This document shows, in pieces, positions 4,803 through 49,296 of a DNA stretch of 64,000 bases. Location of the stretch: assembly GCA_002269645.1 (NCBI GenBank), contig NIVC01002868.1:1-64000 (forward strand), read 5' to 3'. The first letter of the stretch is position 1. The number at the start of each line of letters is the position of its first letter. This stretch comes from Macrostomum lignano. Its lineage: Eukaryota. The position numbers and the translations under genes are program-made. The notes beneath the pieces were generated by a model, which made no database searches, was not told the origin of the DNA, and saw only the letters and a program-made list of their open reading frames with translations.

Positions 4803-14399
<9,597 letters not shown>

Positions 14400-14831: not shown

Positions 14832-16687
<1,856 letters not shown>

Positions 16688-19687: not shown

Positions 19688-22600
19688 TCAGGCAACCACT
19701 GTGCCAGTTTCCTTATCAGCAGCCAGCAGCTCATTAGCAGAGTGCAGCATTCGAGCTGTTTGATCTTTCACTGACATGGCCTCCAGTCGGGCGGCTGGAG
19801 ACTGGTACCAGCACTCAGTGAGCACCTGGCACAGTCTGCTCAGCACCGGGTGCTCATGCCAGATAGGCAGAATTGGCGGCCGAGCATTGGCTGGCGGACA
19901 GACAACGGCTTGCATCTCTTCCAAGGTTGGATTGTTGGGCACCAGATCGTGATAGGGTTGCTGGTATTCTGGCTCAGCCGTGATGCCTCTGCAATGTGGT
20001 TTTGTTATAATCATTGGATCTGGGATGCTGGCCTTATCTGGTTACTGCATTGGGGATCTGGGATGCTGGCCTCATCTGATCAATGTATTGGGGATCTGGG
20101 ATGCTGGTCTCATCTGATCAGTTTATTGGGGATCTGGGATGCTGGCCTCATCTGATCAATGTATTAGGGATCTGGGATGTTGGTCTCATCTAATCAGTGT
20201 ATTGGGGATCTGGGATGCTGGCCTCATCTGATCAATGTATTAGGGATCTGGGATGCTGGTCTCATCTGATCTGTTTATTGGGGATCTGGGATGCTGGTCT
20301 CATCTGATCTGTTTATTGGGGATCTGGGATGCTGGCCTCATCTGATCAGTGTATTGGGGATCTGGGATGCTGGCTTCATCTGATCAATGTATTAGGGATC
20401 TGGGATGCTGGCTTTATCTGATCAATATATTAGGGATCTGGGATGCTGGCTTCATCTGATTAATGTATTGGGGATCTGGGATGCTGGCCTCATCTGATCA
20501 GTGTATTAGGGATCTGGGATGTTGGCCTCATCTGATCAGTGTATTAGGGATCTGGGATGCTGGCCTCATCTGATCAATGTATTAGGGATCTGGGATGCTG
20601 GCTTCATCTGATCAATGTATTAGGGATCTGGGATGCTGGTCTCATCTGATCTGTTTATTGGGGATCTGGGATGTTGGTCTCATTTGATCAGTTTATTGGG
20701 GATCTGGGATGCTGGCCTCATCTGATCAATGTACGAGTATTAGGGATCTGGGATGTTGGCCTCATCTGATCAGTGTATTGGGGATCTGGGATGCTGGCCT
20801 CATCTGATCAATGTATTAGGGATCTGGGATGCTGGCTTCATCTGATTAATGTATTGGGGATCTGGGATGCTGGCCTCATCTGATCAATGTATTAGGGATC
20901 TGGGATGCTGGCTTTATCTGATCAATGTATTAGGGATCTGGGATGCTGGCTTCATCTGATTAATGTATTGGGGATCTGGGATGCTGGCCTCATCTGATCA
21001 ATGTACGAGTATTAGGGATCTGGGATGTTGGCCTCATCTGATCAGTGTATTAGGGATATGGGATACTGGCCTCATCTGATCAGTGTATTGGGGATCTGGG
21101 ATGCTGGCCTCATCTGATGATCATTAACTGTATTGGGGATCTGGATGCTGGCCTTATTTCATCAGTATTGGGAATATGGGATGCTGGCATCTTATCATCA
21201 TTGACTGTATTGGGGATCTGGGATGCTGGTCTCATCTGATCAGTTTATTGGGGATCTGGGATGCTAAAACTACCTGAGACGATACCAAAATGCAAAAGCA
21301 AAAGTACAAAAACATGGCAATTACCTATTCGGATCATGGCACCTGACGGCAAGCTCCCAAAACACTAATCCAGTAGCATAGACATCAGCCTTGCGCAGAG
21401 CGGTGAAATCCCTGGCATCCTGGCTGGCATTCAAGCATTCCGGACTCAGATAGCGCCTGGTACCAACTAGTCCATTGTTAGCCTCTCCAATGCCGCTATC
21501 GCTGCCGCCTACAACTCCGAGTCCGCCGCTGCCAAATCCGATAACATTGCCGCAGCCGGGTTGCAGAGCTACGGCTAAACCAAAATCAGCAATACAGCAA
21601 GACAGATCGGATTTCACCAGGATATTGTTGGATTTGATATCCCGATGCGCAATAGCTGGTTTGCATTTCACGCCGGTGATTTCGCTGTGGAGATGAGCCA
21701 GACCGCTGGCAATGCTGTGCAGCATTCGAGCCATGGTGTGCTGATCTACTGTACACCTGGTCAGGTAGCTCTGCAGAGATCCATTAGCGTGATAGTCTGT
21801 AATGAGCCACAGCTGGGTCTCCAGTCCAATATCGATATTATCAATAGCAATGAAGCCCAGGATGGAGTCGTGTCGCATGCCGGGCAGTTCGTACATGTGA
21901 CCTTCGGTGGACCAGGAGCTCTCCGCCCGGCTGCTGAATATCTTCACCGCCACGGGGTCGTTGCGCCACTCGGAACGGTACACCTGAGGTGATTTAGGGA
22001 AATTTTTGGGGAGATTTGTTGATGAAAATCGAGCGTCACTAGGTTTAAAGCTTAATGAGAGCACGGGGACCAAATACCAGACTTTTCACAGTCATTAATA
22101 GATGGGATTACTGACGAGTGCGCTTATGAAGTGATTCATAATTAGTTATGTAGACTATGTAGGGCTTTTTAACTGCTGATGGAGTACTTGATAAGGTGGT
22201 CATAGGGTATTTGATAGTTGGTCATGAAGTGTCTGATAGGTGGTCATGGGGCATTTGATAGTTGGTCATGGAGTGTCTGATAGGTGGTCATGGGGAATTT
22301 GATAGTTGGTCATGGAGTGTCTGATAGGTGGTCATGGGGTGTTTGATAGGTGGTCATGGGGTGTTTGATAGGTGATCATGGGGTGTTTGATAGGTGGTCA
22401 TGGGGTGTTTGATAGGTTGTCATGGAGTGTCGGATAGGTGGTCATGGGGTATTTGATAGGTGGTCATGGGGTGTTTGATAGATGGTCATGGAGTGTCTGA
22501 TAGGTGGTCATGGGGTAGTTTCAGATAAGTGGTCATGGAGTGGTTGATGAGTGGTCATTGAGTGGCTGATGAGTGGTCATGGATTGGCTGAGGAGTGGTC

Positions 22601-24453
22601 ATGGATTGGCTGAGGAGTGGTCATGGATTCGCTGAGGAGTGGTCATGGATTCGCTGAGGAGTGGTCATGGATTGGCTGAGGAGTGGTCATGGATTGGCTG
22701 ACGAGTGGTCATGGAGTGCTTGATAAGTGGTCATGGAGTGCTAGATAGGTGGCTATAGAGTGCTTTATGAGTGGTAATTTAGTGATTGCTGAAATGTTCG
22801 TTAATGATTTATGTGGATCAGGGTCTCAATGACTGATTTATCTGGCTAATGGAGTGAGTCATTAGGGCGTTCCCCAGATCCGCGAACAACAAACAAACAA
22901 ACAAAAAGCACAAACCTGACCAAACCGCCCCTGACCAATTAGCTCGCGATGTTCAATCTCCCTAGCAACAGTCCTAGGCAACAATATTGGCAGACCGGAT
23001 CCGCTGCCAGTTTGAGAATGATCAAACACCGGAGCGGTATCAACGCCACTGGTATTCTGATTCGGCTGCTGCTGCTGCTGCTGAGTCGATGGCAGTGAGT
23101 CGCCATTACAGACACCGGTACTGGAGCTGCCACCGCCGGCGCTTCCACGCGAACGATTATTAGGCACAGCCAGCATCTTCTGCTGCTGCTGGCTAACATT
23201 AGGAGCCGGACAGACAAAAGCAACAGCAGATGACGAATTGGAAGAATTCGAAGCAGTTAGAAGTTTTTCAACTGCGCCAGTTGAATCCAACTTCTGGCGA
23301 TGCTGACCGAAAGCGTCGAATGACGAACCGGAGGCTGATGATGAAGCTGGCTGTTGATGATGTTGCTTCTGCTGATGCTGAGGTGGCGGCGAAGGTGACG
23401 AAGAGCCGGACGACTTCAATAAAGAGTCCGACTGGTCCAGCCGTTGGCTCTGCTGCAGTTTCAATCTGCGCCGATGAGAATAGCAGATGCCTAACAGGCA
23501 GGCCAGGAGAGCCAGACAGGCGAAGGCCATGGCGCCAACTGTGGCAGCCACAATAGCACTGCTGTTTGGCTGCGGATGAAGGGAAGATTCTTAGCATTTA
23601 TGAGTCATCGTAGGACGGGGTACTACGTTTCTTATAGCTCTATTAATTACGATTATATGTTTATAATTTAATATCCTAGGTATACTCAGCAACATTGAAA
23701 AGTCGGCATCACAGAAGATTGGACGGATTAAAGCTACCCCGAATCAGTTTTCTCGTATCTTTTATTTCAGAACAAGCTGTTGAAACCCGCGGATTTTGAA
23801 CCCGGGGAATTCCAATCCCCGGAACTACTTTTGCATGTATTCTGAAATCTAAGGCCATACACAAACAAAAACTTGTTAATAGTTAGTAGGATAGAGGTAG
23901 ACATAAAATGGAGCACATTCGTGTAAATTAGAGTTTGAGACATTGTTGGCTGGGGTACTGCGCAGAATGTCAGGCAATGTCTGTCTGACTCTAAAACATA
24001 TATTGCTAAACTCTGGTCTCTCCCAGACTCTCCCTACGTCCCTTGGATCCTTTAAAATTTCTATCGTCTCTTTGTTTCCTCTCATCTCTCTCGTCTCTCG
24101 TCTCTCCTCTCTCCCCTCTCCCCTCTTCTCTCGTATCTTCCCTCATCTCTCTTCTCTTTCATCTCTCTTATCTCATCTCTTGTCTCTTCTTTTCTCTCTC
24201 CTCTCCTCTCTCCTCTACTTTTTCGTTTTTTCTCTCCTCTCTCCCCTCTCCTCTCACCCCCTCTTCTCTTTGATCTTCATTCTCCTTTCTATTCTTTTCT
24301 CTATTCTCTTAACTCTCTCCTCTAATCTCTCATCTCTCCCCTCTTCTCTCGTCTCTTCCCTCACCTCTTTTCTCTCTCGTTTTTGCTCTCTCATCTTTCC
24401 TTTCTCTTCTTTTATCTTTTCTCTCTTATCTCTTCTCATTTCTCTCTGCTCCC

Positions 24454-24495
<42 letters not shown>

Positions 24496-27400
24496 TTTTC
24501 TCTTATCTCTCCTCCTCTCTCTACTCTCTCCCCTCTCCATTCTCCTCTTTCCTCTCCTCTCTCCTCACTCACTTCTCTACCTTTGTCTCTCCTCTCTCCT
24601 CTCGTCTCTGTAACCTCTCCTCTGTTCTCTCTACTCTCCCATCTTTTATCTGTTCACTCTCGTCTCTGCTCTCTCATCCCCCTCTTTAATCTGGCATCTC
24701 TGTCTTATATGTTCTCTTACCTCTCTCCTCTGTACTCTTTTCTTTCCCCTCTTTTGACTCCTCACTTTCTTTTCTCCTTTCTTCTTTTCTTTTCTCTTCC
24801 CTTTTCTATACTCTGTCTCCCTCTCTTCTCTCACTCCACTCTCCTCTCTCCGTTATCTCTCATCTCTCATTTCTCATCTCTCCTTCCACCTCTCTCATCT
24901 CTACAACCTTAGAGATGTAGAGATGTATCTTTATCTCTTATCTCTTTCCTTTACTCTCTCATCTCTTCTTTCACCTGTCTCCTCTCTCCTCTCATCTGCA
25001 GCTCTCTGCTCTCTCATCTCTACTCTCTCCTCTCGCTTTTCCTCTCTCCCCTCTTCTCCCCCTCTCTCTCTCATCGTCCTCACCCCCTCATCTCTCCTAT
25101 TATCTTTTATCTTTTCTTTTATCCCCTCTGTCGCCTCTCCTCTCTTCGAATCGTCTATTCCTTCTTCTTTCCACTTTCATCTGCCCCTCAGCTATGAGCT
25201 GGAATGCTGGATTCTTTATCTGGCCTTTGAGGTAAAAGTCTGCCCATCCCTGCTTGAAAAGCCAGTTTGTGGGACGTAGTACTCTCATGGTTGTTCTCAT
25301 GCTTTGATCACGTCATCTTTCTTGCCAATTTGCAGCCCTGAAAGGAATTTGTGTATCTTCAGCTTCACTGCAATCTGCATCAGTCTAACAACCAAGGAAA
25401 TACGCATTTCTTAGAAGGCCATTTAATATTTACACAGTACCTTTAAAAGAAACCTAAAATTTCCATGGTGTGCCTAATTTAGTAGGGTTGTATTGCATTG
25501 CATGGCATCGCCTTTTCATAAATATTTCGCTTTTACAAACCATGCTGGATAGTGGATTCCCTCGATTTGCCAATTGCCATCCAGTGTTAAACTACTGCAG
25601 AGTTTGCCAATACAGAGGGGAGGGCAGTGGTTAGAATTTCTCACTAAACTGTTATGGCTAAACGTATAGCCTCTCCACTCTCGGGGTGGAATTCCAAAAC
25701 ACTGTACATTTGCTATGTACATTCAGTCCTATCGCCTGACCCTTCGTCTGGCTCTGGGGCAATGAGTGGAGTGAGTGAGTGGCACAAACAATAGAAAAAG
25801 CAGACAAACTTCACATGCTTACAGTTTCTTTTTCGATTGAGTTACAGAGTTGAAACTTTACATTTAGATAGAGAATGGGTCAATGAAGAATTGTGTCAAG
25901 TTTGAAGTCAATCGCTTTACGTGGAGCAAACTTATGACAGCTGAAAGTTAGTCAATTTTGAAACCCTTTTACACATCTGGGCCCAGATCGGTATCGGGAA
26001 AGAGAGGCAGGCGGGCGGAGGTTGGGGTGGCTGTCTCGCTGAAAAAAACAGTCCAACTTTAAAAGTGCACAGCGCCGTTCAGGATTAACTTTGAGAATCG
26101 AAATTTTACACGATTGTGTCAAAATAGTTGAAAATTGCCTGTGTCAAATTTGAAGAGAATCGGTAGAAGTGGAGCGGCGCTATGGAGGATTTAGTGAAAA
26201 AATCGCGCATTTTGAGCAGTTTTTTGTACTTTTAGGCAGGAAGACTTGATTCTAGGAAATTTAAAGGTAGCCTAAGACATTCTCCGTAGTGAGTTTAGGG
26301 TGGGTGTAAAGTTTAGTGTCATTTGGTTGAGCGGTTTGGGAGTCCATAGCGATCAAAATTGTCCACACACAGACAGACAGAGTTTTGATTTTTATATGTA
26401 GAGATAGTCCAAGAGAAATTGCTCACTGGCGCCTTATACTGGCGACTTTCAATGTTGCTTGAGCATACATTTCCTGTGTCTAAAAATCATAACGGCACAA
26501 CTCAACTCATACAAAAATGACAATATATAGAGTCCAAAATTTATAAACAAAAAAGCTCTATAAAAATATCAACAAATCTATAAGAAAGACAAGGCATATA
26601 AAAACTTTTTGTTTTCGCTAAAACCTGTTTTTTCATTCTTAAGTTTAGTCCTTGTTGTATATGTAGACATTTGTAGGTCAGAAACCCCACCCTCCTCTAA
26701 ACAGGTTCTGACATTTTGTCAGAATCGGATGGCTCACCCAAGACTCGTTATCAGCTCTGCGGTGACTAGCCATACCAAGCGCTGATCCATCATTCTCGCT
26801 AGCCGGATGCTGTACACCATAGAATCCAGACAGCGAAGTCAAGTACTGCTGCAGATAGCCATCAGTAGCATACGCGTCCATCATCTCTTTAGCTCCAATC
26901 TGAGCAAATAATGACGTCTGATTCAAACTCTTAGGCAAATTACAGCCAGACGGTTCTGAGCAGCAATTCCCATCCGGAGTTTTTGAGCACATCAGATCGC
27001 CAATAAAATCCACCGTGTCTTGATTAAGTCGATTGCTATCGCTGTTACGTAGCGAGTGAACATCAGTGTAGCGTCTGTTAAAATTGCAAGTTTGTTGGGG
27101 ATAAAACGTTATAAGATTTCTAACATTGACTAGAAACAGGATATATAATTACATATTATGACATGGCGACTTTATACAGAGCATACAAATACAGACTGGG
27201 TTATGGACATGTATATTTCCCATATTGTATAGTTCCCTTAACTAGGAATATTGGTCACTCACTAAATGAGACTTAAAACACCATGAAATTATTGATATGA
27301 TGGGAGGATGGGGTACAATAGTAGAAACAAATTAATTTTGAGGTTACAGACTTGAGCAACCTAGATTTTTTCTGTCATATGCCCTATATGTACTAGAGAT

Positions 27401-30400
27401 AGTGGGGGCTAAAGTTGAGATGAATGTTTTTTTACACTCAATGCGAGGGAGCTCTAAATAAACCTAGGATTCAAGCAACATAATTTTTGACACTACATTC
27501 AAATGGTGTGGTTTGGGTAATAGGGGTTAAAGTAAGTTAAATGCAGTCCTAGACATTGTTCTAGTACAATAAATGAATAAGATCTATTAAATAAGCAAAT
27601 ATTAGACATAAGCTAGTTATAGGGAATAAGATCATGCAATTCAATGGCTTTGATCAGATAATATGTTATATATGGTATATGTTACCTTAATTTTTCTACA
27701 TATAAAAAAAATAGAACCTTAAAGTTATTTAATCCATGTGAGCTACCAATTATTAGTGTTTTAGCAATTAACAAAATATGCTATAATTTTGGTGATACAA
27801 TATTGAATTTGATCTGATAGTTTTATTGGTCAGAAAGTTTTTTATCTATTGTATGTTTAATATCACCATATATATATATATATTCTAATTCTATAATTTA
27901 ATATCTACAAGCAATCTAACCTACTTTAATTATATATGCAATTTAGCTTAAAAATGAATGAACAAAAAAAAATTGTTTTTTTGTAATAGCTATCATTATT
28001 GAAATGAATGTATTTTTTTTATAGATATCAATTGATAAACTAGTTCATTTAAACAAATTGAAAAAATGAAAATCAACAAAGGTTGCCTTATTATTTTTTT
28101 TATTTTATGAATATAAGACTTAAGTATATATATAAAGTGGCTAAAAGATATTGAGATAAAATTTAAGATGTCATAGCATCTATAAAACATAAAAACCTAG
28201 AGGAATAGACTGCTAATCAATGAGTCAAATAACCTTATCACTATTTTGCCAATAGTCTAACCCTTTTGCCAGTTAAATAAGCTTGTCATACGACTAAATA
28301 GTAGATAAATAGTTACAAAGCTTTTGGGACTAAAAGTGAGATAAGAGTATTAGCTAAAAATGATAAAAAAAATTTATTAGCATTGGGATAAGGACTGCTA
28401 GCTATACAATGACAAGATTATGACTCATTATTTAATTAAAGATACTAATAGCAAGTGTATTTGACTAATACCAGAAAAAAAAACTATACAAAGTCTAAAT
28501 TCTTTAGGAAAAAAATAAAAAAACAGTTATTTTTACAAATTAAAGCTAGACATATACTTAAACATATTTAAGCATTTTTTAACTTTTATCTTCTAGTCCA
28601 TATTTGCATTTTTACTTAATGTTGCAAAGTTATAGATTTATAGAAAATCCTTCTAAAATTTTTGTTTTATTAAGGACTTTGCCAAGATGCCTTTAGAAGG
28701 TAAATTCTAATAAAACATATTTTTTATAAATCGATAGCTCAGCAGTATAGTTACATAAAAAGCATAAAAATAGAAAGAAACAAAAATACTTTGTTATAAG
28801 GATAAAATGTTTGTCTAGCCTTTATTGAAAAAATTATGTCATTTTTTATTATAAAAATGACTTTGAAAAGTGGCCACTTATTGGATTCCTAAAACTTAAG
28901 TTAGAAAGTTCTACAATATTTTTAAAATATATTTATAAAATACAAAGCCATTGGCATTAGTAGATTCAAAACTTATATAAAAGTCAATTTTAATAAATAG
29001 GTTGGCTTTATTGTGCCTAGTCAAGAAACAATTTAAATATGCTAAATGATGATTATTACAAAAGAAAAAAATAATTTTAAAACACAATAGTAATAATAGT
29101 AATATAGCAAAAATTATAAGAAAAAGTTTTCTTTTGTTAGCCTGTATGTTCTACCATTTATGCCTTTGAGCCATCTTGCCTATTCCCTAGACATTTTGTC
29201 TCCTAGGCATTCTGGCTTTTCCATTAAGATTTCCAATTAGACAATAGATTTTTTTCTTAGGAGTAATATGTACCTAATTTTGTAGGCAACTCTGATCCAT
29301 TGCAAAACCCTATCTAGATTAGAATAAAATAGTTTAGTTAAATAATATATTATCACTTAGGCACTAAACACTATCAGAGTGTCAATAAAGTATATTTGCT
29401 AAAGTTGTTTATAAATAGAAAGCTTTTTTAATTCTAAGGAATCTGGGTTTTTTGTGCAAATGGCATCCTGGTCTTAAAAATTGCACCCTGAAATTTGACT
29501 CAGGGTGCAAAAAGCACACTAGAATTTTTTGCAAGGATGTGATACAGATTTCACAATTTAGTGTTATGGATGTGCAGCGCATCTTGGTCTTGAAAATTGT
29601 ACCTTGAAATCTAACACAGGGTGCGAAATTACATTTAAGTTATGGAGGAAAAAAAACCCAGCAAGGAATCGTCTAATTTCTAATAGCTTAACAAATTTGT
29701 TAGCTTAATAGCAAGATTGAAATAGACCTAGCACTATAAATTTGGTATTAGCTACAATATAATTAAATAGCTGGGAACCCCTAAAACTATAGTTGCACTT
29801 TATTTATTTTTTAAATATATAAAATCCAACTAAAAAAGAATAACCTTTTTTAAAAGGCATTATTTAAGACAAAATAATATTTTTAAAGCTAAAATGATCA
29901 TAAATGCCTAAGGAATAAACTATATTATGCATATACATGCGCAACCTTGGGAATCACTTGGCCATTTGTATTGGCAACATATACATGTAAGTTGCTATTG
30001 GCTGAGAGTAGTCACATGACTACTATTCTATCCAATAGCAACTTACATGTGTTAATTTTAAGATTTAATTAAAATTTTAATTAAATTAAAATTTCAAGTT
30101 TAAAATTTTAAAACTTTAATTTTAAGTTTTTTATATATATACAGTTGAATAGATAGAATACAAGAAGTAAGCATTGTTTAATTTTAGATAAATGTTAGAT
30201 CAGTTATATGAATAAGCTACTTAAAAAAGGAAGTCTTCAAAGATTTTTCCTAGAAAAAAGTGGCACAATAAATATTTGTTGGTTTTTTCAAATAAACTTT
30301 TTAAAAGATAGTTCTTTTTATAGTCAACACTTTATGCTTGGGCGCAAACTAGGGATTCACCTGGCCATTTCTATTGGAAAAACACACAATGTAAGTCGGT

Positions 30401-33400
30401 ATTGGATGGAATAGTAGTCGCGTGATTGCTCTTAGCCAATAGCGACTTACATGTGTATATTGCCAATAGAAATGGCCGAGTAATTCCCAAGGTTGTGCAT
30501 GTATGCAACACTTAAAACAAAGGCAGTTGTTATTGTTTTAGTAACTATATAAATGATGAGATGGTTATTTTTTAACTTAATATATAAGGCTCATTCCATA
30601 TAAGCATGGTCGTAACATGACAGGTTATTTTTACTTATAAAATGAAATCTAATAATAGAATATACTAAACCAATATTTTAAATGAAAGATTATTTTGTCT
30701 AGAATATATTTATAGAGTTTCATATAGATATCATCATTAGTATAGATGCTATTAAACCTTAAATGACACTTATGGTTGTAACGACAGGATTTTTGACATA
30801 TAGAAACTAAAAGGTAAAAGTCTTATAACATTTTTCATTTTTGATATTTTGCAATACATTTTTAAAATTTGACTAAGAACATCTTTAGAAATCATACTCT
30901 TTTATTAGAATATATAAACTCAAAAGGCAACAAAGATACAAAAGAAAAGGCAGCCTTATGGTCGTAACATTATGGTCGTAACATATTTTTTTCTGTCAAT
31001 TCAGTAACTTTGAGGTACTAATACATTAAAAATATAATAGATTATTTGGTCACCAATGCTTTTATCTGATGATGCAAGTACTATACTTTTATCTATAGTT
31101 TGTTTCAACCTTCAAAAGCTTTCTATTTGTTTTTAAAAGGTACAAAATCTTAATGATGTCTTTTGCTTCGAAAAATGTCCAAATTGATAACAATTGATAA
31201 TATACTAATCCAACATTTTACCATTCCTTTATTCTTAGATTGTATATATTGCACAATATAAACATTTGGTAAAAAATAGGCTAATTAGGCAATGGCAAGC
31301 AAAAATATTGACTTTTTTCTATTTTCCAAATATGTCCATCTTATATGGAATGAGCCATAAGACAAATATTATCTTAATGAAATAACAAACTTTTAGTGTA
31401 AATTTTAAAAAGTTAATTATAAAAGTAAAGAAATATATTATTAATAAATACATTCAAACAATAATAACTTATAATAGTGGCTTACTTTAGAAAATTGTTA
31501 ATTATCACCTATAGTCTAGAAGGTGGCATTTAAACTAGAAAATTTCAACATGTTTTTGTTTTTGATAACAATCTTAGCATACACTTGGTATATAAAAAGC
31601 CAAGTTTAAAGCTAATATAATTGTATAATTAAATAGCAACCAACAAAAGCTTTTTAAAACATAATTAGAAACTAAAATAGAAAACATTACAACTTATAAG
31701 AAAAACAAAATTAAAACAAAGAATATCAATTTTTAGCAAACACAGCTATTTTAATATTTATATTTATTAAAACTCATATTTCTAAAAAATATACTTTCTA
31801 AAAATTGGCATATGAACAACTTTGCATTTTGAATAACTTCTAAATTTTATATTGGCAAAAACATACAAAAAATGAATTCTCATTCTATTTCTATAATATA
31901 TTTACCATGATCTTCACTATAGATTACTATCTAATAATTTAAAAGTTTTTCCACATGACCATAAATTAAAAATCGCCATGTGCCTTTTATGCCAGAATTT
32001 TCTAGCATATTTTTGCTTTCACTAACAATCTTGATAGACATTTAACATATAGAATTTTCAGGTTCAACATGAAATGTACATAGTCAGCATACAAAAAATA
32101 GCCAAGTTCAAGGCTAATATAATTGTGTAGTTAAATATCAACCAATGTTGAAAGCTTTTTTAAAAAATAATCAGAAATTAAAATTTAAAATATTAAATCA
32201 TGAAAAAATCAAAATTAAAATAAAGAATATCAGTTATTAGCAAAAGATAGCCTTTCCCAGGATAGAATTCTTCCTCAGAAGTAGGAAAATACACACTGTA
32301 AAAAAGTCATAATGCAAATCATAGCGGGTCTATGTGCTAAAAAATGAAATTTCTAGGTTTTCAATTTTTACGCTGACATAAAAATTAGAAAGTTATACTT
32401 TAAGTGTAAAGTAGCTTGAATACTAATTTTTAGAAGAAATATTCTTTAAAAATTATAAGAGTTTTACTGAAATTTAAAGTAACTGTTTTTTGCTAAAAAC
32501 TATTATTCTTTGTTTTACTTTTGTTAAAAATTTTCTAGCATAAAAACAACTTTCTGGACTATGAAAAGTAGGAAGACTTAAGCGCACATATACTACATGG
32601 TATATAACTATGTTGAATGCATGTAAAAGTCAAATCTTATCTGACTATTCTGTGGCAAACAGCTTCTTTGCAAGCATATATGATGGAGCATGCGCATACC
32701 TTCTTTTAGGGCGCACAAGTAGGCTCGTGCAAGAATTCTATCTTGGAGTCTTTTTAAAGTTTTGTAAAAGTTTTGAATTGCTAAAAGTATATATTTATTA
32801 AAAATGGCATATAAACAATTTTAGTCTTGGTTAGGGGTTGGACGATATTGAATTTTTGAGATTTTCAAGATTGGCCTCTTTGAAATTTTACACTGGAATT
32901 AAATTGAAATAAACATGAATTATCATTCCAGCATATGCCAGCCATGATCTGGACTATGGTACCTAGCATGATCCAGACTATGGTTTAGGCCTAGATAAGA
33001 TAGTATCTTATATAAAAATTGTAAAATAAACATTTTGCTATTTATATGATTGACATAACAATAATAACAACTTTCTAACAACCTTCTAAAAATGAAAAAA
33101 TATTTTGGCTAGCATTTAAAAACATTATAATATAAAGCTTGATAATATATTATATTAGGCCAGTAATCAATTGTAATAACAAAAGTACTTACCCAGCTGT
33201 ATAGTAATGCAGATACTTAACATCAAGTCCCATTAATTTCAGTGATCCCTTTAGTCCTTTTAACCACTCTTGTCCTTGTAATTTAAGCTTGCAAAGCAAA
33301 GATAAAATGTTCCCTTTAGGACCAGCTCTTTCACCAGTTAAACAAGGATCAAGAGAATCAAAAATACAAGCCATTGAAGAATCTCTTCCAACAGCTTCAC

Positions 33401-33713
33401 GACAAAGAGGATTGTTGAACAAGGGTTGAAATGTCGTAACTATATTAGCAATGCAGTCGTTCGAAGTAGTTTTTAATTCAGTGCCATCAAAAATTAAACA
33501 TTGTTGCAGGGTGAGAAAGTTAACTTGTGACTTTACGAACTCATTCCAAAGTGCGGTAGAGTTGGGGTTCATAGATTTACATTCATTTTCGGCGATGGTG
33601 TCATTGCTGATTGTCGAGTAAGAAATACATTCTCGGGGAAAATAGATGCACTGAACTGCACAAACCGCTTTCACAACGATGAGAACCACAGTAAGTTTAA
33701 TAAGGAATTGCAT
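19688..33713 (-). CDS. TGF-beta/activin type I receptor kinase, ALK4/5/7 (Baboon)-like, 823 aa, 5 exons
   Basis: Exons 33713-33193 (signal peptide, Cys-rich), 27074-26738 (CCSEPSGCN box), 23569-22916 (TM, GS box TGSGSGLPILLPRTVAR, GQGRFG), 21983-21325 (VAVKIF, HRDIKSNNILVK, DFG, GTRRYLSPE), 19988-19688. All GT-AG with compatible phases (2,0,0,2), 2472 nt. The L45 loop IAIDNIDIGLETQLWL resembles the ALK4/5/7 type. Kinase exons are certain; linkage of the two 5' exons is inferred from phase and motifs. Confidence 0.85.
20025..21265. repeat. 38-bp minisatellite (GGGATCTGGGATGCTGGCCTCATCTGATCAATGTATTA)n filling receptor intron 4
   Basis: About 32 tandem copies. Confidence 0.95.
22195..22775. repeat. 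22-bp minisatellite (GGTCATGGGGTGTTTGATAGGT, then GGTCATGGATTGGCTGAGGAGT) in receptor intron 3
   Basis: Two sub-blocks of variant units. Confidence 0.93.
23773..26404 (-). mobile_element. Non-autonomous Helitron-like element (2632 bp)
   Basis: On the minus strand: 5' TCTCTACATATAAAATC...TGTCTGTCTGTGTG; 3' end ...CCGGGGATTGGAATTCCCCGG...CCGCGGG...CAGCTTG. Inserted between host A and T with no target duplication; the empty site matches the intact MITE copy. Confidence 0.75.
23990..25190. repeat. CT-rich low-complexity tract inside the Helitron-like element
   Basis: Degenerate (CT)n/(CTCT)n; source of the Leu/Ser-rich pseudo-ORFs. Confidence 0.9.
29934..30503. mobile_element. Foldback-type MITE with ~120-bp imperfect terminal inverted repeats
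   Basis: Left arm TACATGCGCAACCTTGGGAATCACTTGGCCATTTGTATTGGC... is the reverse complement of the right arm ...GCCAATAGAAATGGCCGAGTAATTCCCAAGGTTGTGCATGTA. Confidence 0.75.
30588..31356. mobile_element. TIR-bounded non-autonomous element (~770 bp)
   Basis: 17-bp perfect inverted termini GGCTCATTCCATATAAG (30588-30604) and CTTATATGGAATGAGCC (31340-31356); target duplication not clear. Confidence 0.6.
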
Positions 33714-36394
33714 GTTTGCAGAGTAGGGCTACTTCAAAGATAGGCCTTTAAGTTCACATTTGTCAGTAAAAATTTGTTGGCTTTGTAGTAATTAAAAAAT
33801 ATATTTATTTACAGAACAACTCCTCTGCTCCTTGAAATAAATTGAAAAATTGAAAGCGCATAATTTTTTGCCTTAAAATAGTACTAATATCAAATTGTTC
33901 AAAGCAGAAACCAGCAACATAGTAAAACAAATCATTTAACTAATAGATTGTTCTATCCGTTTTCTTAAACTGTGTAAATTGAAGTAGTTTATTAATTATT
34001 TACCAAACTTTCCACTTTTGAAAGAAATTATTTTGCTTTGTTTACAGTGCCTTGGCAACAAGTTAATAAAGTAAAGCACGCCAAGCAATGGAATGCCGAA
34101 ATTTATTTTCAAAAAACGCTTTAAAGCAAATTTGGCACGCGCCTTACTGATATTGTTCAAATGCGCCAATACTACGAAATGGCTGCAAATAACTTTTTGC
34201 AACCAAATTAAGCCAACTTAATTCTACTGCTCAGATTAGTGTGGAATAATGCATGCATATATGCCAAGGGCATATGCGTAATGGATAAATATTGAAAAAA
34301 ATATTTTTGCAATTAAGATAGTGCTGTAAACCAAAATCCAACTTTGTGTATATATTTGTCTACTTTGTGTACATATAACATGTGCATGTACCACTTTTGC
34401 ATCTGCATGAACTATAGTGAAAAGAATAATTCACTAGGCCTAATATATAAAATATTATGTAATGTAGGCCTTATTGATATACATTATACATAAGCAAGTG
34501 CTGCAATGTATAGTGCCAATAACATGATATGATGGTTTTTCATTTGACTGATATCTAGATCCTAGGCCCCTACCTCTAGGCTTAGCCAATGCTAAGAGGG
34601 CAGACAATAGGCTAAGGCATTGTCTGCCCTCTTTTTCCCCTTGACTTGCTAAGTTGCTACTTATTTTTATTTTTGCCTTTGGTTTTTTACTTAGCTTAGG
34701 ATCAATGTGTCTAGAAATATCAAGGTGGCATTGCCACCCATTTTGCTAACATCTGGCTGGCAACCATGGGTAGCTAGTGCTACAGTGTTATACAGTGATG
34801 CAGGGAGTTCTAATGGTGCTAGTGTTCTGTGTGTCCATAGTGCAGTAGGCTTAGTCCCTCTCCGGAGAATCTAGGAGATAGATTGTTGTTCATCTAAATA
34901 GCCTTTAAATAATAGACAAGTCACAAACTTGCCTTTGGTTTTGGTTAGAGTTTATTTTTAGAATTGGCCAATGGCCCTTTTATATAGGCCTAGTTGCAAT
35001 AGCCCATAGCCAGGTTAGGCAAGTGTTTGCATAAGATAGGCCTAGGTAAGGCAAAGCCTAAAATGCCCTATCCTGCAAATATATCTATCATATATAGGCC
35101 TATTATATGCTAGAATCATACATGCGCAACAGTTAGCCATTCTGGCTGACTGATTTGGCAGCCAACCAACGTAAGTCGCAAAAATGCCTATCCGAATAAA
35201 TACCCAAGTAGTACTAAGTAGATGACAAGGAATTTTACCTTAATAAGACAAGTCATAGTTACTCCTGCTGTTTACCCAAAGTTGCATTATTTTGCTTTAG
35301 GGTTTTTTTTTACATGTAAGTCACATTTTTGGCCAAAAACTATATTGCATTTTTGGTAAAACAAGTGCATAAGCAGCATGGCATGTATTGCTAGAATGTT
35401 TATCTATATAAAATGTCTAAAATTGTTATTAAGAAATATAATAAATATATTCTTATGACTTTATTAAAGAAATTTTGATTAAAAGCAACCAAAATATTTA
35501 CCAAGATCAATATTAAATAATAAAACAATATTTTAGGCAATCATTTTTCTTTTGGCTTTTTGTAGAATAAGAGACTGAAAAAATGACAAGGTTGACAGAC
35601 CTTGACAAGATCAAGCACACGAGATATTTCTTTCATGCCCCTTCCCTTTGGGTTTTTACCTTCCTCTACCTTCCCCTTCAACAATTTTTTAGTTATGCCA
35701 ATGATTTGTAGCTAATTAATTAATCTCTTTCTTAATTTATAATGGTATAATGATATATAATCCAATGATAATAGTTCTTTTTTTTCAATCTAACCCAACT
35801 AATAGTCCTAATTATAGAGCAAATTGTATACCAATAAAAATCTATATTGCTTGAATCTCTAACCCTAAAGACTTAGAATTATCCCTATAAAAGTTTTAAA
35901 CTAGCAATATTCATTTATTAATATTGTTTTATCATTTCTTATCAATTAAATCAATGGATCAATGGCTTTAACAATATTTAATATTATGTCTTAGTTAATA
36001 AGTGGCCAATATTATTAATATTAGATCTAAGAATGAGTTATATAAAATACGCATTTTTATAATTACTGCTATATCTATTTTATTTAAAACCTCTATATCT
36101 AAAGCTATTATAAAACCTTAATATGGTAGCTATTGGTTCTGTTTTTATAAATCTCATTCTAATGAATTTATTATAATACTATAAGATTTATCTAAGATAA
36201 TTAAAAAAAATTTTCTTAAGCCAAAAGGTTTCAAAATCGGGATCTTTAAAGTTCCAAATAATATTTTTTACTTTTCAACTATAATAGTAATTTTGTAAAT
36301 TAGTTAGTTAGGTTTGATATTAACCTTAAGTTGTTATTATCAATGCTCCTAGACTATTTGGAAGTTATTTATACTTTTTTCAGACCATAGATTT

Positions 36395-36602: not shown

Positions 36603-36646
36603 AAATTAATATGACTGCACTTGGAATTTAATTGCAATTTTCTGTT

Positions 36647-39600
36647 ATGGCAGCAGCAGTTGCAGAAACAGCATTGGTTCCCACTGTGGCCACTCAACAG
36701 CAGCCACCAGCAGAAGATGCTCAACCAAAAGATGACTCAAATCTGTACTCATCTCGCCTGCCTCGAATGACCAAAGAGGAGCTCAAGCGAATCTGCAAAG
36801 AGCTCAAACTGTACCTGACCCCTCACCTGAATGACATTCTCTATCTGCACTATAAAGGCTATGCTCGCATCGAGAACCTGGAAGAGTACACCGGCCTTCG
36901 CTGCCTCTTCCTCGAGTGCAATGGAATTCGAAAATTAGAAAACCTGGACGCCCAGACAGAGATGCGCTGTCTTTACATGGCAAAAAATCTGGTTGAACGA
37001 ATTGAAAATCTTGACTCAATGGTCAACTTGGACACCATCGATTTGAGTCACAATAGTCTGGAACGCATTGAGAACTTGTCTAACTTGACTAAACTGACGA
37101 AAGTGATTTTGGCTCACAACAAAGTCTCCAGCATCGAAGATCTCAAAGGATTGCTGGATTGTCCATCGCTAACCGTGGTTGATTTGCAGCACAATAAAAT
37201 TGATGATGCTCAAGTTATTGATGAGATCTTTGTTAAGATGCCAAACCTGAGGGTGCTATACCTGCAGGGCAACCCAGTGGTCAAGCAGGTAAGGATTTTT
37301 GGTTTATCTTCTTTGACCCATCTATCTGTTTATCGTTCCGCGTGCAACTCCATCCCACCCGTCTTCCCAACTCTTTCCATCATCCAACCCATCCTCCCAT
37401 TCCCACCCGTCTCCCCATCCATTCCAACTTGTCTCCCCATCCTCTCCTATTCCCACCGTCTCCCCATCCATTCCAACTCGTCTCCCCATCCTCTCCCATT
37501 CCCACCCGTCTCCCCATCCTCTCCCATTCCAACTCGTCTCCCCATCCTCTCCCATTCCCACCCGTCTCCCCATCCTCCCATTCCCACCCGTCTCCCCATC
37601 CTCCCATTCCCACCCGTCTCCCCATCCTCCCATTCCCACCCGTCTCCCCATCCTCCCATTCCCACCCGTCTCCCCATCCTCCCATTCCCACCCGTCTCCC
37701 CATCCTCCCATTCCCACCCGTCTCCCCATCCTCCCATTCCCACCCGTCTCCCCATCCTCCCATTCCCACTCGTTTCCCCATCCTCCCATTCCCACCCGTC
37801 TCCCCATCCTCCCATTCCCACCCGTCTCCCCATCCTCCCATTCCCACTCGTTTCCCCATCCTCCCATTCCCACCCGTCTCCCCATCCTCCCATTCCCACT
37901 CGTTTCCCCATCCTCCCATTCCCACCCGTCTCCCCATCCTCTCCCATTCCCACCCGTCTCCCTATCCTCTCCCATTCCAACTCGTCTTCCCATCCTCTCC
38001 CATTCCAACTCGTCTCCCCATCCTCCCATTCCCACCCGTCTCCCCATCCTCCCATTCCCACCCGTCTCCCCATCCTCCCATTCCCACCCGTCTCCCCATC
38101 CTCCCATTCCCACCCGTCTCCCCATCCTCCCATTCCCACCCGTCTCCCCATCCTCCCATTCCCACCCGTCTCCCCATCCTCCCATTCCCACCCGTCTCCC
38201 CATCCTCCCATTCCCACTCGTTTCCCCATCCTCCCATTCCCACCCGTCTCCCCATCCTCCCATTCCCACTCGTTTCCCCATCCTCTCCCATTCCCACCCG
38301 TCTCCCCATCCTCTCCCATTCCCACCCGTCTCCCTATCCTCTCCCATTCCAACTCGTCTTCCCATCCTCTCCCTTTCCAACTCGTCTCCCCATCCTCTCC
38401 CATTCCCACCCGTCTCCCCATCCTCCCATTCCCACCCGTCTCCCCATCCTCCCATTCCCACCCGTCTCCCCATCCTCCCATTCCCACTCGTTTCCCCATC
38501 CTCCCATTCCCACCCGTCTCCCCATCCTCCCATTCCCACTCGTTTCCCCATCCTCTCCCATTCCCACCCGTCTCCCCATCCTCCCATTCCCACTCGTTTC
38601 CCCATCCTCCCATTCCCACCCGTCTCCCCATCCTCCCATTCCCACTCGTTTCCCCATCCTCTCCCATTCCCACCCGTCTCCCCATCCTCTTATAATTTCT
38701 TCTTAACCTCCATCCTACCGGTCTACCCACAGCCTCTCTATCTGTTCCCAAAGAATCATATTTTACCCCCCCCCCTACATATCTACGAGCTAACACCTGA
38801 AATCCACCCCAATATTTACAGATAAAATTCTACCGCAAGACGCTGACCCACAAGCTGCCCAACCTCACTTACCTGGACGACCGTCCGGTGTTCCCCAACG
38901 ACAGGCGCTATGCTGAGGCCTACTTCTCCGGCGGGGCGGAAGCGGAACGAGCCGAACGGAAACTCGTGCAAGAAGAAGAGCAGCAAAAGACCATGGCTAG
39001 CGTGGAGTGGCTGCTAAGGAAGCGCCAGAAGAATGAAGTCGCCACCGCTCAGGTGGGGGACTTGAAACATCGAATCAGGATAATTGTGAAATCCATTTAA
39101 AAGTCACTAAAAACGTTAAAATGAGAATCATCCCCAAATCTCACCTGAGAATCGTCTAAATCTCACCTGGGAATCGTCCCCAACTATCACCTGAGAATCG
39201 TCCCCAAATCTAACCTGAGAATCGTCCCCAACTATCACCTGAGAATCGTCCCCAAATCTCACCTGAGAATCGTCCCCGAACTTCACCTGAGAATCGTCCC
39301 CGAACCTCACCTAAAATTCGTCCCCGAACCTCACCTGAGAATCTTCCCCAAATCTCACCTGAGTATTGTTCCCAAATCTTACCCGAGGATCGTCCCCAAA
39401 TTTCACCTGAGAATCGTCTCCATATCTCACCTGAGAATCGTCCCCAAATCTCACCTGAGAATCGTCTCTAAATCTCACATGAGAATCGTCTCCTAATCTC
39501 AACTAAGAATCTTCCCCAAATCTCACCTGAGAATCGTCCCCAAACCTCACCTGAGAATCGTCCTCAAATCTCACCTGAGAATCGTCTCTAAATCTCACCT

Positions 39601-43147: not shown

Positions 43148-43840
43148 ATGTCTTCAGACTCGGCACCGAAGCAGTTATTAACAAAGTTTGTCGTGTCCCC
43201 ACTGACCGGACCGTCGCCCTACATCAAGCCCTACTGCGTTGATTTTGTGCTTGACGGTGTCAATCGCAAGTGGCACTGCATGCGCAACCATGATGCAGTG
43301 GTGATCATTGTGTACAACACAGACCGCAAAGCTCTAGTGTTAGTTCGCCAATTCAGACCAGCAACTTACTTGCAACGCTGTCTAGAGACTAACGGCGGCA
43401 AGCTGGAGTCGTTAATGTCAGTTGAGACTGCTCCGCCTTTGCCAGCAGAAGCTGGCGATGTACTGGAAGCCTGCGCTGGCATCGTTGACAAACCCGACAA
43501 GAGCTTGGCAGAAATTGCTGCGGAAGAAGTGCTGGAAGAGTGTGGCTATCGAGTTGAACCGGATAAACTTGAACTGGTTGGCTGCTGTCGGTCTGGTGTC
43601 GGGGTGTCTTCTGCTAAGCAGACAATCTACTATGCTGAGGTGTCAGATTCTGTGCAAGTCAGCGAAGGCGGTGGAAACGCTGCCGAAGGTGAACGCATTG
43701 AAGTTGTACACTGGCCTGTTGACCAGATCGACCAACTGTTGCTTGGAAGCGGTGGCACTAGCGGTAGTTGTAATGAAATTTACATTGGTCTGCAGTTCTG
43801 CCTTCTCTGGTTCAAGGTTAACAAGATGCAGTCATCGTAG
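43148..43840 (+). CDS. NUDT14: Nudix hydrolase, UDP-glucose pyrophosphatase NUDT14-like (230 aa, intronless)
   Basis: HDAVVIIVYN...LVLVRQFRPA and the variant Nudix box LEACAGIVDKPDKSLAEIAAEEVLEECGY, plus EGERIEVV, as in NUDT14. Confidence 0.88.
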   Translation: MSSDSAPKQLLTKFVVSPLTGPSPYIKPYCVDFVLDGVNRKWHCMRNHDAVVIIVYNTDRKALVLVRQFRPATYLQRCLETNGGKLESLMSVETAPPLPAEAGDVLEACAGIVDKPDKSLAEIAAEEVLEECGYRVEPDKLELVGCCRSGVGVSSAKQTIYYAEVSDSVQVSEGGGNAAEGERIEVVHWPVDQIDQLLLGSGGTSGSCNEIYIGLQFCLLWFKVNKMQSS

Positions 43841-44770: not shown

Positions 44771-44846
44771 TTCTAATTTTCTGTCTCCTTGGGGATCATA
44801 ATTAATTCATACATATCCCCTACTGGTGCATGCTCTCCCAGCAACC

Positions 44847-47800: not shown

Positions 47801-48768
47801 CCCCTGTCGCCTATTCATAAATCCGCCCCTGTCACTATCCATAAATCCGCCCCTATCACTATCCATAAATCCGCCCCTATCACTATTCATAAATCCGCCC
47901 CTGTCACTATCCATAAATCCGCCCCTATCACTATTCATAAATCCGCCCCTATCACTATCCATAAATCCGCCCCTGTCTCATCCATAAATCCGCCCCTGTC
48001 TCTGATCCATAAATCCGCCCCTATCACTATCCATAAATCCGCCCCTGTCACTATCCATAAATCCGCCCTGTCACCTCATTCATAAATCCACCCCTATCAC
48101 TATCCATAAATCCGCCCCTATCATAGTTTAGAAACAATTTCTATTCACTGTTTAAAAAATCCGCCCCTCTATCCGCCCCCCTTCCCAGGCGATCCGCCAG
48201 CCCACCATCCTGCAGCAGACTGGCTACCTTCAGGAGCGAGCCCTGGCCCTGGACAAGGACAACGCGGAACAAATCACCCGCATGGGTCACCAGCTGCTCA
48301 TGCAGGGCAAAGTTCGCGATGCCATCAAAACATTTCGCCGAGCTCTGGACCAGGATGAGAGCAGTGTGACCGCCCTGCAGGGCATAATCCGCTGCCAGCT
48401 GGCTGAAGACCTGCTGCAGGAGGCCGCCTCTCAGCTGGACTTCCTCAAAGAAGTTCAGAGCAGCCTGGGATCGACCGGGGTAAGTTGAGATTTCCATCCG
48501 CGATTCTAAAATTGCTTTTGAGTTTTCGCGTGCTCAGTTCGCTTTGATTAATTGACAAAATTTTCTCGTGTCGATTTCGCTGTTCGAACAGGATTCGAGC
48601 AAGGCGGATGAAGCGGTAACTGGATGCTGGCTGGCGATTGTTTGATGCCAGAGTGATTTTTTATTTTTGTTTTTTCCTCAATTGCGTGTCTTCTGCTTTT
48701 TTGTTGGGCAGCTCTAACTGCTTCTGTCTGTCTGTCTGTCTGTCTTTTAGTCTGTCTGTCTGTCTGTG

Positions 48769-48801
<33 letters not shown>

Positions 48802-48805
48802 TTTA

Positions 48806-48839
<34 letters not shown>

Positions 48840-48840
48840 G

Positions 48841-48892
<52 letters not shown>

Positions 48893-48929
48893 AGTCAGTC
48901 TGTCTGTCTGTCTGTCTGTCTGTCTTTTA

Positions 48930-48963
<34 letters not shown>

Positions 48964-48964
48964 G

Positions 48965-49008
<44 letters not shown>

Positions 49009-49032
49009 AGTCAGTCTGTCTGTCTGTCTGTA

Positions 49033-49064
<32 letters not shown>

Positions 49065-49092
49065 AGTCAGTCTGTCTGTCTGTCTGTCTGAC

Positions 49093-49159
<67 letters not shown>

Positions 49160-49160
49160 G

Positions 49161-49195
<35 letters not shown>

Positions 49196-49196
49196 G

Positions 49197-49251
<55 letters not shown>

Positions 49252-49252
49252 G

Positions 49253-49296
<44 letters not shown>

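What the first reader, a model, noticed from the sequence alone, without database searches (positions are those of the whole stretch)
26738..33713. TGF-beta type I receptor with a ~290-aa ectodomain
Two otherwise orphan minus-strand ORFs splice in phase onto the TM/GS exon: 33713-33193 (signal peptide, 10 Cys, donor GG|GTAAGT, phase 2) and 27074-26738 (acceptor AACAG, Cys box CCSEPSGCN, donor TGG|GTGAGC, phase 0). Canonical type I receptors have a ~100-130 aa three-finger ectodomain with the Cys box close to the membrane. Here it is over twice as long, with long inter-Cys loops and a ~70-aa stalk after the box, which may mean an extra domain or altered ligand and co-receptor use.
Basis: partly seen in the sequence, partly recalled or inferred. 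Interest (0 to 1): 0.7.

Follow-up and report, generated by a model that had tools for sequence, protein, structure and literature searches.

The report
Divergent TGF-beta receptor, oversized orphan ectodomain
This is a real gene for a TGF-beta/activin-type signalling receptor from an unidentified animal. Its outer, ligand-binding part appears to be about twice the usual length and resembles no known protein, but that rests on a gene model not yet confirmed by RNA.

Summary
The described features are all present at the stated coordinates. Five minus-strand exons (33713-33193, 27074-26738, 23569-22916, 21983-21325, 19988-19688) join in phase into an 823-aa protein. [quoted passage not shown]

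Exon 2 carries the only CC-x5-CN Cys box in the whole six-frame window, so it belongs to the receptor.

Exon 1 is a genuine coding exon:
- it has a 179-codon open frame in 26%-GC DNA;
- it holds the only ATG plus signal peptide in 9 kb;
- its stop lies inside a top-scoring GTAAGT donor (p~0.01).

It is the best available first exon. The link to exon 2 rests only on phase, strand, order and lack of alternatives.

The ectodomain matches nothing: no Pfam Activin_recp hit, no PDB hit, and no homologue among 1.8 billion representative proteins. AlphaFold single-sequence models are uninformative.

The signal peptide plus ectodomain is 288 aa, against a median of 130 (maximum 223) in 101 homologues. 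The juxtamembrane region and activation loop are also expanded, so general lineage-specific inflation is as likely as a new domain. Long flatworm type I receptors are a precedent. Interest is moderate.

The parts
33193..33713 (-). Probable first coding exon. It has an ATG at 33713-33711, a signal peptide (aa 1-~19) and a Cys-rich orphan module (Cys at aa 22, 29, 45, 72, 87, 104, 116, 124, 141). The donor is GG|GTAAGT, with 2 nt carried over.
   Evidence: Sequence. ORF-length statistics. It is the only ATG + hydrophobic core + donor candidate on the minus strand in 27.15-36.6 kb. A donor coinciding with the ORF end is rare, 0.9%. RNY periodicity is highest in this frame. No homologue was found.
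27075..33192 (-). Inferred intron 1 (6.1 kb, 26% GC). It contains no credible exon.
   Evidence: The three-frame scan found only short or repeat-derived open frames. No match to a canonical-ectodomain HMM was found.
26738..27074 (-). Exon 2: linker, Cys-box knot C-x7-CC-x5-CN (26965-26939 holds CCSEPSGCN) and a 66-aa Cys-free stalk. The acceptor is aacag|A and the donor TGG|GTGAGC (phase 0). It has no in-frame ATG upstream of the box apart from M202, so it is an internal exon.
   Evidence: Sequence. The Cys-box motif is unique in the window. hhalign aligns only this box to the canonical ectodomain profile.
27075..27129 (-). Possible 5' extension of exon 2. Acceptor tgttag|A at 27119 is in phase with donor 33193 and adds NLITFYPQQTCNFNR, with one more Cys. 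Acceptor tttctag|T at 27129 is in phase only with the weak donor CTG|GTGAAA at 33335.
   Evidence: Enumeration of donors and acceptors with phases is.
22916..23569 (-). Exon 3: the last ectodomain residues, the TM helix (~23560-23489), a 164-aa Q/S-rich juxtamembrane region, the GS box TGSGSGLP (Pfam match 23020-22961) and the start of the kinase. The donor is CAG|GTTTGT.
   Evidence: Sequence. Pfam TGF_beta_GS scores 23.3 bits against a cut-off of 21.3.
21325..21983 (-). Exon 4: the kinase core. It holds VAVKIF, an L45-like loop IDNIDIGLETQ, HRDIKSNN, DFG and a ~17-aa Gly-rich activation-loop insert.
   Evidence: Sequence.
19688..19988 (-). Exon 5: the kinase C-lobe and the stop codon (TGA at 19690-19688).

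Best explanation
This is one protein-coding gene on the minus strand (about 33.7 to 19.7 kb, five coding exons). [quoted passage not shown]

Shown:
- An intact GS box and an intact Ser/Thr kinase with the catalytic Lys, HRD and DFG motifs.
- A single TM helix.
- An exon directly upstream that carries the family's CC-x5-CN knot.
- A further upstream exon that is real coding sequence, starts with a signal peptide, ends in a consensus splice donor and joins in phase.

Inferred:
- Exon 1 is spliced to exon 2. This gives a type I membrane protein with a mature ectodomain of about 270 aa. It consists of a ~120-aa Cys-rich module with no detectable relatives, a ~60-aa Cys-free linker, a minimal Cys-box knot and a ~70-aa stalk.
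- From family knowledge, the protein works like other type I receptors. A ligand-bound type II receptor phosphorylates the GS region, and the activated kinase phosphorylates an activin/TGF-beta-type R-Smad. The L45 loop keeps the DN-D-G--TQ skeleton of ALK5.
- The oversized ectodomain is most simply read as extreme lineage-specific divergence and loop or linker expansion of the ancestral three-finger domain. The same kind of expansion is seen in the juxtamembrane region and the activation loop of this protein. A newly acquired functional domain is less likely.
For: Receptor identity:
- Pfam finds Pkinase and TGF_beta_GS.
- PDB matches rank ALK5 3e-95 > ALK2 1e-89 > BMPR1B 6e-86 > type II 4e-63.
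- The 120 best database hits are all TGFBR1/ACVR1B-C/Baboon at 45-53% identity.

Exon 2:
- It holds the only Cys-box motif in the six-frame window.
- Invertebrate orthologues use the same CC-x5-CN spacing.
- The frame is open upstream of the box without a usable ATG.

Exon 1:
- The open frame is significant.
- It is the sole signal-peptide first-exon candidate in 9.4 kb.
- The best donor in the region sits exactly at the ORF end, which happens for 0.9% of stops.
- It is in phase with exon 2.
- Four N-x-S/T sequons are spread over exons 1 and 2.
- No other exon-like or canonical-ectodomain sequence lies anywhere between exon 2 and the divergent DNAAF1-like gene at 36.6 kb.
- GC3 rises smoothly 5' to 3' with the local intron GC, so the low GC3 of exon 1 has a regional explanation.

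General expansion: TM-to-GS is 164 aa against a median of 47, and the activation loop has an insert.
Against: - There is no transcript evidence and no orthologous locus, so the exon 1 to exon 2 junction is purely a model.
- Phase compatibility alone is a 1-in-3 event.
- Exon 1 has no homologue at all. Its GC3 (0.32) is well below that of the other exons (0.46-0.59).
- Neither Pfam Activin_recp nor a custom profile of 105 orthologous ectodomains matches exon 1 or exon 2 significantly.
- The Cys spacing of exon 1 does not resemble fingers 1-2 of the canonical fold.
- Flatworm TGF-beta receptors are reported to lack canonical signal peptides, and the 5' ends of their gene models are often wrong (PMC10073696). 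The argument that the receptor needs this signal peptide is therefore weaker than it looks.
Confidence: 0.68

Rival explanations
1. Exon 1 belongs to a separate transcript, a small secreted Cys-rich orphan protein. The receptor would then use a different, short and undetected 5' exon, possibly without a canonical signal peptide. Its ectodomain would be much shorter than 290 aa but would still carry the 69-aa stalk.
For: - Exon 1 has no homology to any receptor.
- Its GC3 is 0.32 against 0.46-0.59 in the other exons.
- The ORF is formally complete, from ATG to TAA.
- A 6.1-kb AT-rich gap separates it from exon 2.
- Flatworm receptors lack canonical signal peptides, and their 5' gene models are often wrong.
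Against: - The stop codon is embedded in the strongest donor of the region, p~0.01 for a stand-alone ORF.
- No alternative ATG or signal-peptide exon and no other coding-like ORF lies between 27.1 and 36.6 kb.
- Exon 2 supplies only the last 4 of the family's ~10 ectodomain Cys, and nothing else in the window could supply the rest.
- The first poly(A)-signal hexamer is ~390 nt downstream of the stop, no closer than the background density of ~4 per kb predicts.
Confidence: 0.24
2. Exon 1 is the first exon, but the junction differs from the reader's. One option is acceptor 27119, which adds 15 aa and one Cys. The other is the pair donor 33335 / acceptor 27129, which removes 47 aa, adds 19 aa and gives signal peptide plus ectodomain of ~260 aa. 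Alternative splicing between these is also possible.
For: - All three pairs are in phase.
- 27129 has the best polypyrimidine tract (cctgtttctag).
- 27119 scores above 27074 in the crude acceptor score.
Against: - Donor 33335 scores 1.3 against 4.9 for 33193.
- The frame stays open for 47 more codons up to 33193, which is unlikely for intron sequence in AT-rich DNA.
- Cys parity cannot decide between the options, because the signal-peptide cleavage site (after A16 or A19) is itself uncertain.
Confidence: 0.3
3. The upstream ORFs are relics. The receptor's ectodomain is degenerating, or the gene is a pseudogene or a ligand-independent kinase, so the 'ectodomain' has no ligand-binding function.
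For: - No three-finger domain is detectable.
- The Cys spacing is atypical.
- Finger 3 is very short, only 7 residues between C203 and the CC pair.
Against: - All five exons are open and in phase.
- The kinase keeps all checked catalytic motifs and the GS box.
- The long open frames in AT-rich DNA argue for purifying selection.
Confidence: 0.06

Closest known systems
Human TGF-beta receptor type-1 (ALK5; PDB 1B6C and others)
   Same: The GS region and kinase align end to end (322 bits, E 3e-95). The SGSGLP motif, the VAVKIF Lys, HRD, the GT(K/R)RY(M/L)(A/S)PE segment and the skeleton of the L45 loop are shared. The overall order of ectodomain, TM, GS and kinase is the same.
   Different: - The ectodomain has no detectable similarity.
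- Signal peptide plus ectodomain is 288 aa. ALK5's is roughly 125 aa (figure from memory, not checked here).
- TM-to-GS is 164 aa, against a median of 47 in the 101 invertebrate homologues.
- The activation loop has a ~17-aa Gly-rich insert.
- The motif is DFG rather than the DLG seen in the aligned ALK5 sequence.
- L45 reads IDNIDIGLETQ, against ADNKDNGTWTQ.
Invertebrate TGFBR1/Baboon orthologues (e.g. Lingula anatina P0054, Manduca sexta P0005-P0007, scallop Tgfbr1 in PMC3510168)
   Same: These are the best database hits, at about 50% identity over GS plus kinase. They have the same CC-x5-CN form of the Cys box (the CCX5C knot is described in PMC3510168).
   Different: In 101 homologues, signal peptide plus ectodomain is 96-223 aa (median 130), box-to-TM is 8-60 aa (median 20), and there are 6-13 Cys before the TM. 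Here the values are 288 aa, 69 aa and 14 Cys. Most homologues have a Pfam Activin_recp hit; this protein has none.
Echinococcus multilocularis type I receptors EmTR3 (772 aa) and EmTR4 (721 aa)
   Same: They are experimentally characterised type I receptors far longer than the ~500-aa norm. EmTR3 has an ALK5-like L45 loop and an unusually long juxtamembrane region. Both keep a Cys box and a GS box. The 5' ends of their automatic gene models were wrong (PMC10073696). They set a precedent for lineage-specific inflation of this receptor class.
   Different: Their Cys box is preceded by 6-7 Cys, against 10-11 here. They have no canonical signal peptide, whereas a clear one is present here.

Membership tests
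[quoted passage not shown] | A Ser/Thr kinase domain more similar to type I than to type II receptors | tested here: met
   PDB phmmer scores: ALK5 322 bits, ALK2 304, BMPR1B 292, ALK1 270, type II receptors <=217. All of the top 120 database hits that carry a source name are type I receptors or unnamed/hypothetical entries; none is named as type II.
[quoted passage not shown] | A GS (SGSGSG-LP) region immediately N-terminal to the kinase | tested here: met
   Pfam PF08515 scores 23.3 bits against a cut-off of 21.3, at aa 470-489. The sequence is TGSGSGLPILLPRTVAREI.
[quoted passage not shown] | A single-pass TM helix between the ectodomain and the GS region | tested here: met
   The Kyte-Doolittle window finds a hydrophobic stretch from aa 289 (SSAIVAATVGAMAFACLALLACLLG), followed by YSHRRR.
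[quoted passage not shown] | An Activin_recp / three-finger-toxin-fold ectodomain with ~10 conserved Cys | tested here: not met
   There is no PF01064 hit at E<=10 for any splice variant. A custom HMM of 105 orthologous ectodomains gives no hit. hhalign gives E 0.13, covering the box only. AF2 models have pLDDT 36-39. Caveat: several full-length orthologues also lack a PF01064 annotation.
[quoted passage not shown] | A membrane-proximal Cys box, CC-x4/5-CN, preceded by a Cys | tested here: met
   C203-x7-C211C212-x5-C218N is the only such motif in the window. It lies 69 aa from the TM, which is further than in any of the 101 homologues (maximum 60).
[quoted passage not shown] | An N-terminal signal peptide on the same polypeptide | tested here: inconclusive
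   It is present only if exon 1 is spliced to exon 2. That junction is in phase and is the best model, but no RNA evidence is available.
ALK4/5/7 (TGFBR1/ACVR1B/ACVR1C/Baboon) subclass | An L45 loop of the ADNKDNGTWTQ type, which specifies Smad2/3-type R-Smads | tested here: inconclusive
   The loop reads IDNIDIGLETQ. It keeps D, N, D, G, T and Q but differs at 5 of 11 positions. The role of the loop is taken from PMC3510168 and PMC10073696. Smad specificity was not tested.

The most novel reading that the evidence does not exclude
The N-terminal ~120-150 aa Cys-rich module (9-10 Cys, no relatives among 1.8 billion representative proteins) may be a new, independently folding domain. It would be fused, through a ~60-aa linker, to a vestigial Cys-box stub. 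The type I receptor kinase would then have swapped most of its three-finger ligand-binding domain for a different recognition module, and might bind a non-canonical ligand or co-receptor.
Probability: 0.15. Interest if true: 0.65.

Novelty: new variant of a known kind. Interest (0 to 1): 0.35.

Why it matters
Type I receptor ectodomains are small, conserved three-finger domains that dictate which TGF-beta-family ligands a cell can read. A confirmed receptor whose ectodomain is twice as long, has 13-14 Cys and is unrecognisable by sequence would show how far this module can drift, or be replaced, while the GS-kinase machinery stays intact. It would also flag a lineage in which ligand-receptor pairing cannot be inferred by homology. 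In practice it warns that automatic annotation will probably truncate this gene at its 5' end, as happened for the Echinococcus receptors.

Tried and rejected
- **Ectodomain homologues.** A word-indexed search of 5.8 billion proteins gave nothing at E<=10. A full HMMER search with exon 1 against 1.84 billion representatives gave one hit, P0219. That is a repeat-derived junk ORF matching only DPC.T.ERAGP five times, so I rejected it as spurious.
- **Metagenome scans.** Exon 1 gave nothing. The kinase exon gave only generic kinases at <=41% identity.
- **Metagenome contig L001.** It encodes the most similar kinase, P0002, but has no similarity to this ectodomain.
- **Hidden canonical ectodomain exon.** A profile of 105 orthologous ectodomains run against all six-frame fragments gave nothing below E~1.
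- **Cys-rich open frame at 29639-29412.** It is a tandem duplication with poor splice sites, so I rejected it.
- **Fold assignment.** Pfam, the PDB sequence search and AF2 on each exon were all uninformative. I did not run a fold search because the models are too poor.
- **Organism identification.** The DNAAF1-like neighbour is best matched at 56% by Branchiostoma and scattered phyla. Rfam and tRNA scans were empty. The organism remains unresolved.
- **Paralogues or repeats of exons 1-2 in the window.** None were found.
- **Literature search for long ectodomains.** It returned only the Echinococcus precedent for long receptors.
Full report
**Observation**

- The minus-strand ORF at 33713-33193 starts at an ATG (context CAAACATGC). 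It encodes a signal-peptide-like MQFLIKLTVVLIVVKAVCAVQC and has 10 Cys. It stops at a TAA that is part of GG|GTAAGT.
- The ORF at 27074-26738 follows ttttaacag|A. It contains C-x7-CC-SEPSG-CN and ends TGG|GTGAGC.
- Exon 3 begins at 23569 after catccgcag and runs into the TM helix.
- Joined with the two kinase exons (21983-21325, 19988-19688), the five pieces give one open 2472-nt reading frame of 823 aa.

**What the 3' part is**

- Pfam finds Pkinase and the TGF_beta_GS motif above its curated cut-off.
- The best solved-structure match is human ALK5 (E 2.9e-95). It is followed by ALK2, BMPR1B and ALK1, with type II receptors far behind.
- The 120 best hits among 5.8 billion proteins are TGFBR1/ACVR1B/ACVR1C/Baboon proteins of arthropods, molluscs and a brachiopod, at 45-53% identity.
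- No hit is close. The window's own protein is not in the database, and a conserved neighbour (DNAAF1-like) is at best 56% identical to anything. The source is therefore an animal without a sequenced close relative in these collections. I could not name it.
- The catalytic Lys (VAVKIF), HRD, DFG and GTRRYLSPE are intact. The L45 loop (IDNIDIGLETQ) keeps the ALK5 skeleton. The activation loop has a ~17-aa Gly-rich insert.

**Exon 2**

- The motif CC.{4,6}CN occurs exactly once in the six-frame translation of all 64 kb, in this ORF. Chance expectation is 0.42 per window, or 0.06 when the upstream Cys is required.
- Invertebrate orthologues use the same CC-x5-CN spacing (PMC3510168).
- The frame is open for ~50 codons upstream of the box with no usable ATG. 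Exon 2 is therefore an internal exon of the receptor and needs at least one upstream coding exon.
- Its four Cys have the local pattern of the last finger and C-terminal knot of three-finger proteins. The pairing is inferred from family knowledge and was not tested.

**Exon 1**

Several independent features say it is a real, spliced, first coding exon.
- Its 179-codon open frame lies in DNA that is 26% GC. The next longest frame in 27.2-36.5 kb has 96 codons. Simulations reached 179 codons in 0/500 runs with regional composition and in 0.6% with exon 1's own composition.
- RNY periodicity is highest in this frame.
- It is the only ATG followed by a hydrophobic core and a usable donor on this strand between exon 2 and the divergently transcribed DNAAF1-like gene at 36.6 kb. 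This held even with loose thresholds.
- Its stop codon sits inside the best-scoring donor of the region. Only 5 of 801 GT sites score as high, and only 0.9% of stop codons have such a donor at or just before them. That argues against a stand-alone single-exon gene.
- It joins exon 2 in phase.
- Nothing else between the two looks like an exon. The one Cys-rich frame at 29.4-29.6 kb is a tandem duplication with poor splice sites.
- Its low GC3 (0.32) fits a smooth 5'-to-3' rise along the gene (0.32, 0.46, 0.51, 0.59, 0.59) that follows the intron GC.

I put the probability that exon 1 is the receptor's first coding exon at about 0.7. The weak points are these:
- There is no RNA evidence and no comparative evidence.
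- Phase agreement alone is a 1-in-3 event.
- My splice-site scoring matrix is generic.
- Flatworm receptors are reported to lack canonical signal peptides and to have mis-predicted 5' ends (PMC10073696).

**Junction details**

Donor 33193 (phase 2) is compatible with two acceptors.
- Acceptor 27119 (tgttag|A) would add NLITFYPQQTCNFNR and one Cys.

The acceptor with the best pyrimidine tract (27129) fits only the weak donor at 33335. That pair gives a signal peptide plus ectodomain of ~260 aa. In every variant the ectodomain stays at least twice the usual size.

**What the ectodomain is**

It matches nothing.
- There is no Pfam family at E<=10 for any variant and no PDB sequence at E<=10.
- No protein matched in the word-indexed search.
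- The exhaustive HMMER search gave only a spurious repeat protein.
- A profile of 105 orthologous ectodomains aligns only the Cys box (hhalign E 0.13).
- AlphaFold2 without an alignment gave pLDDT 36 and 39. I draw no fold conclusion from these and ran no fold search.

Measured against 101 homologues, the model lies outside the range on three counts:

| Measure | This model | Homologue median | Homologue maximum |
|---|---|---|---|
| Signal peptide + ectodomain (aa) | 288 | 130 | 223 |
| Cys box to TM (aa) | 69 | 20 | 60 |
| TM to GS (aa) | 164 | 47 | 73 |

The intracellular linker and the activation loop are inflated as well. The most economical reading is therefore lineage-wide divergence and insertion in a fast-evolving protein. 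The canonical three-finger domain would be stretched beyond recognition. I cannot exclude a distinct N-terminal domain, given 9-10 Cys and a ~60-aa Cys-free gap before the box.

**How it most likely works**

This is inferred from family knowledge.
- The protein is a type I membrane protein.
- Ligand and a type II receptor bring about phosphorylation of the GS region.
- The kinase then phosphorylates an activin/TGF-beta-type R-Smad.

Only the presence and integrity of the motifs is shown here.

**Comparison and novelty**

By kinase, GS box, TM helix and Cys box this is a member of the type I receptor family, ALK4/5/7 class. It fails the Activin_recp profile test. Precedents for oversized type I receptors exist: Echinococcus EmTR3 (772 aa, long juxtamembrane region, ALK5-like L45) and EmTR4 (721 aa) (PMC10073696). 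From memory, the nematode receptors DAF-1 and SMA-6 are also longer than the norm; I did not check this. I therefore rate it a new variant of a known kind, of moderate interest (0.35). It would rank higher only if the N-terminal module proves to be a separate fold or a new binding module.

Noticed in passing
window 34435-35102 (and 32986): The palindrome TAGGCCTA occurs 5 times in the window, against ~1 expected. Four copies cluster 0.7-1.4 kb upstream of the exon 1 ATG, next to a TATATAAAAG at about 34990-34981. This may be promoter elements of the receptor gene, or of the divergent DNAAF1-like gene.
   Followed up: partly
window 20016-21265, 22179-22752, 24077-24693: The receptor's introns are packed with minisatellites: 38 bp x 32 copies in intron 4, 22/66-bp arrays in intron 3 and a CT-rich array in intron 2. 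They create long spurious ORFs on both strands.
   Followed up: partly
window 36632-38700 (+): A DNAAF1-like LRR exon (36632-37330; Pfam LRR_4, LRR_8, LRR_9) runs straight into a proline-rich tandem array (~37.3-38.7 kb). The array stays open in several frames on both strands, so the 687-aa ORF is probably an exon followed by an intronic minisatellite.
   Followed up: partly
window 13717-14007(-), 15818-16684(-), 43148-43837(+), 44826-54411(+), 59736-60236(+): Pfam identifies the neighbouring genes: a START-domain exon, a TPR protein with an acidic N-terminus, a NUDIX hydrolase, several exons of a TTC21/IFT139-like intraflagellar-transport protein and a WSC-domain ORF. The ciliary genes DNAAF1 and IFT139 flank the receptor.
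   Followed up: partly
window 29412-29639 (-): A 76-codon open frame with 7 Cys lies inside intron 1. It turns out to be a ~95-nt tandem duplication with poor splice sites, so it is not an exon.
   Followed up: yes
window 48638-50027 and 55894-57000 (+): Long (GTCT)n-type microsatellites give 'CLSVCLSV...' ORFs of 245-445 aa inside the introns of the TTC21-like gene.
   Followed up: no
receptor exons, window 19688-33713 (-): Third-position GC rises steadily from the 5' to the 3' end of the gene (0.32, 0.46, 0.51, 0.59, 0.59), in step with the GC of the flanking introns (0.26 to 0.42). This is a sharp compositional boundary inside one gene.
   Followed up: partly
L001 2701-4158 (metagenome contig ERZ23496436 scaffold_3084): The most similar kinase in the database (P0002, 53% identity) is an intronless type I receptor-like gene with an internally duplicated kinase segment, on a 5.6-kb metagenome contig. 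It also has DFG rather than the DLG seen in the aligned ALK5 sequence.
   Followed up: partly
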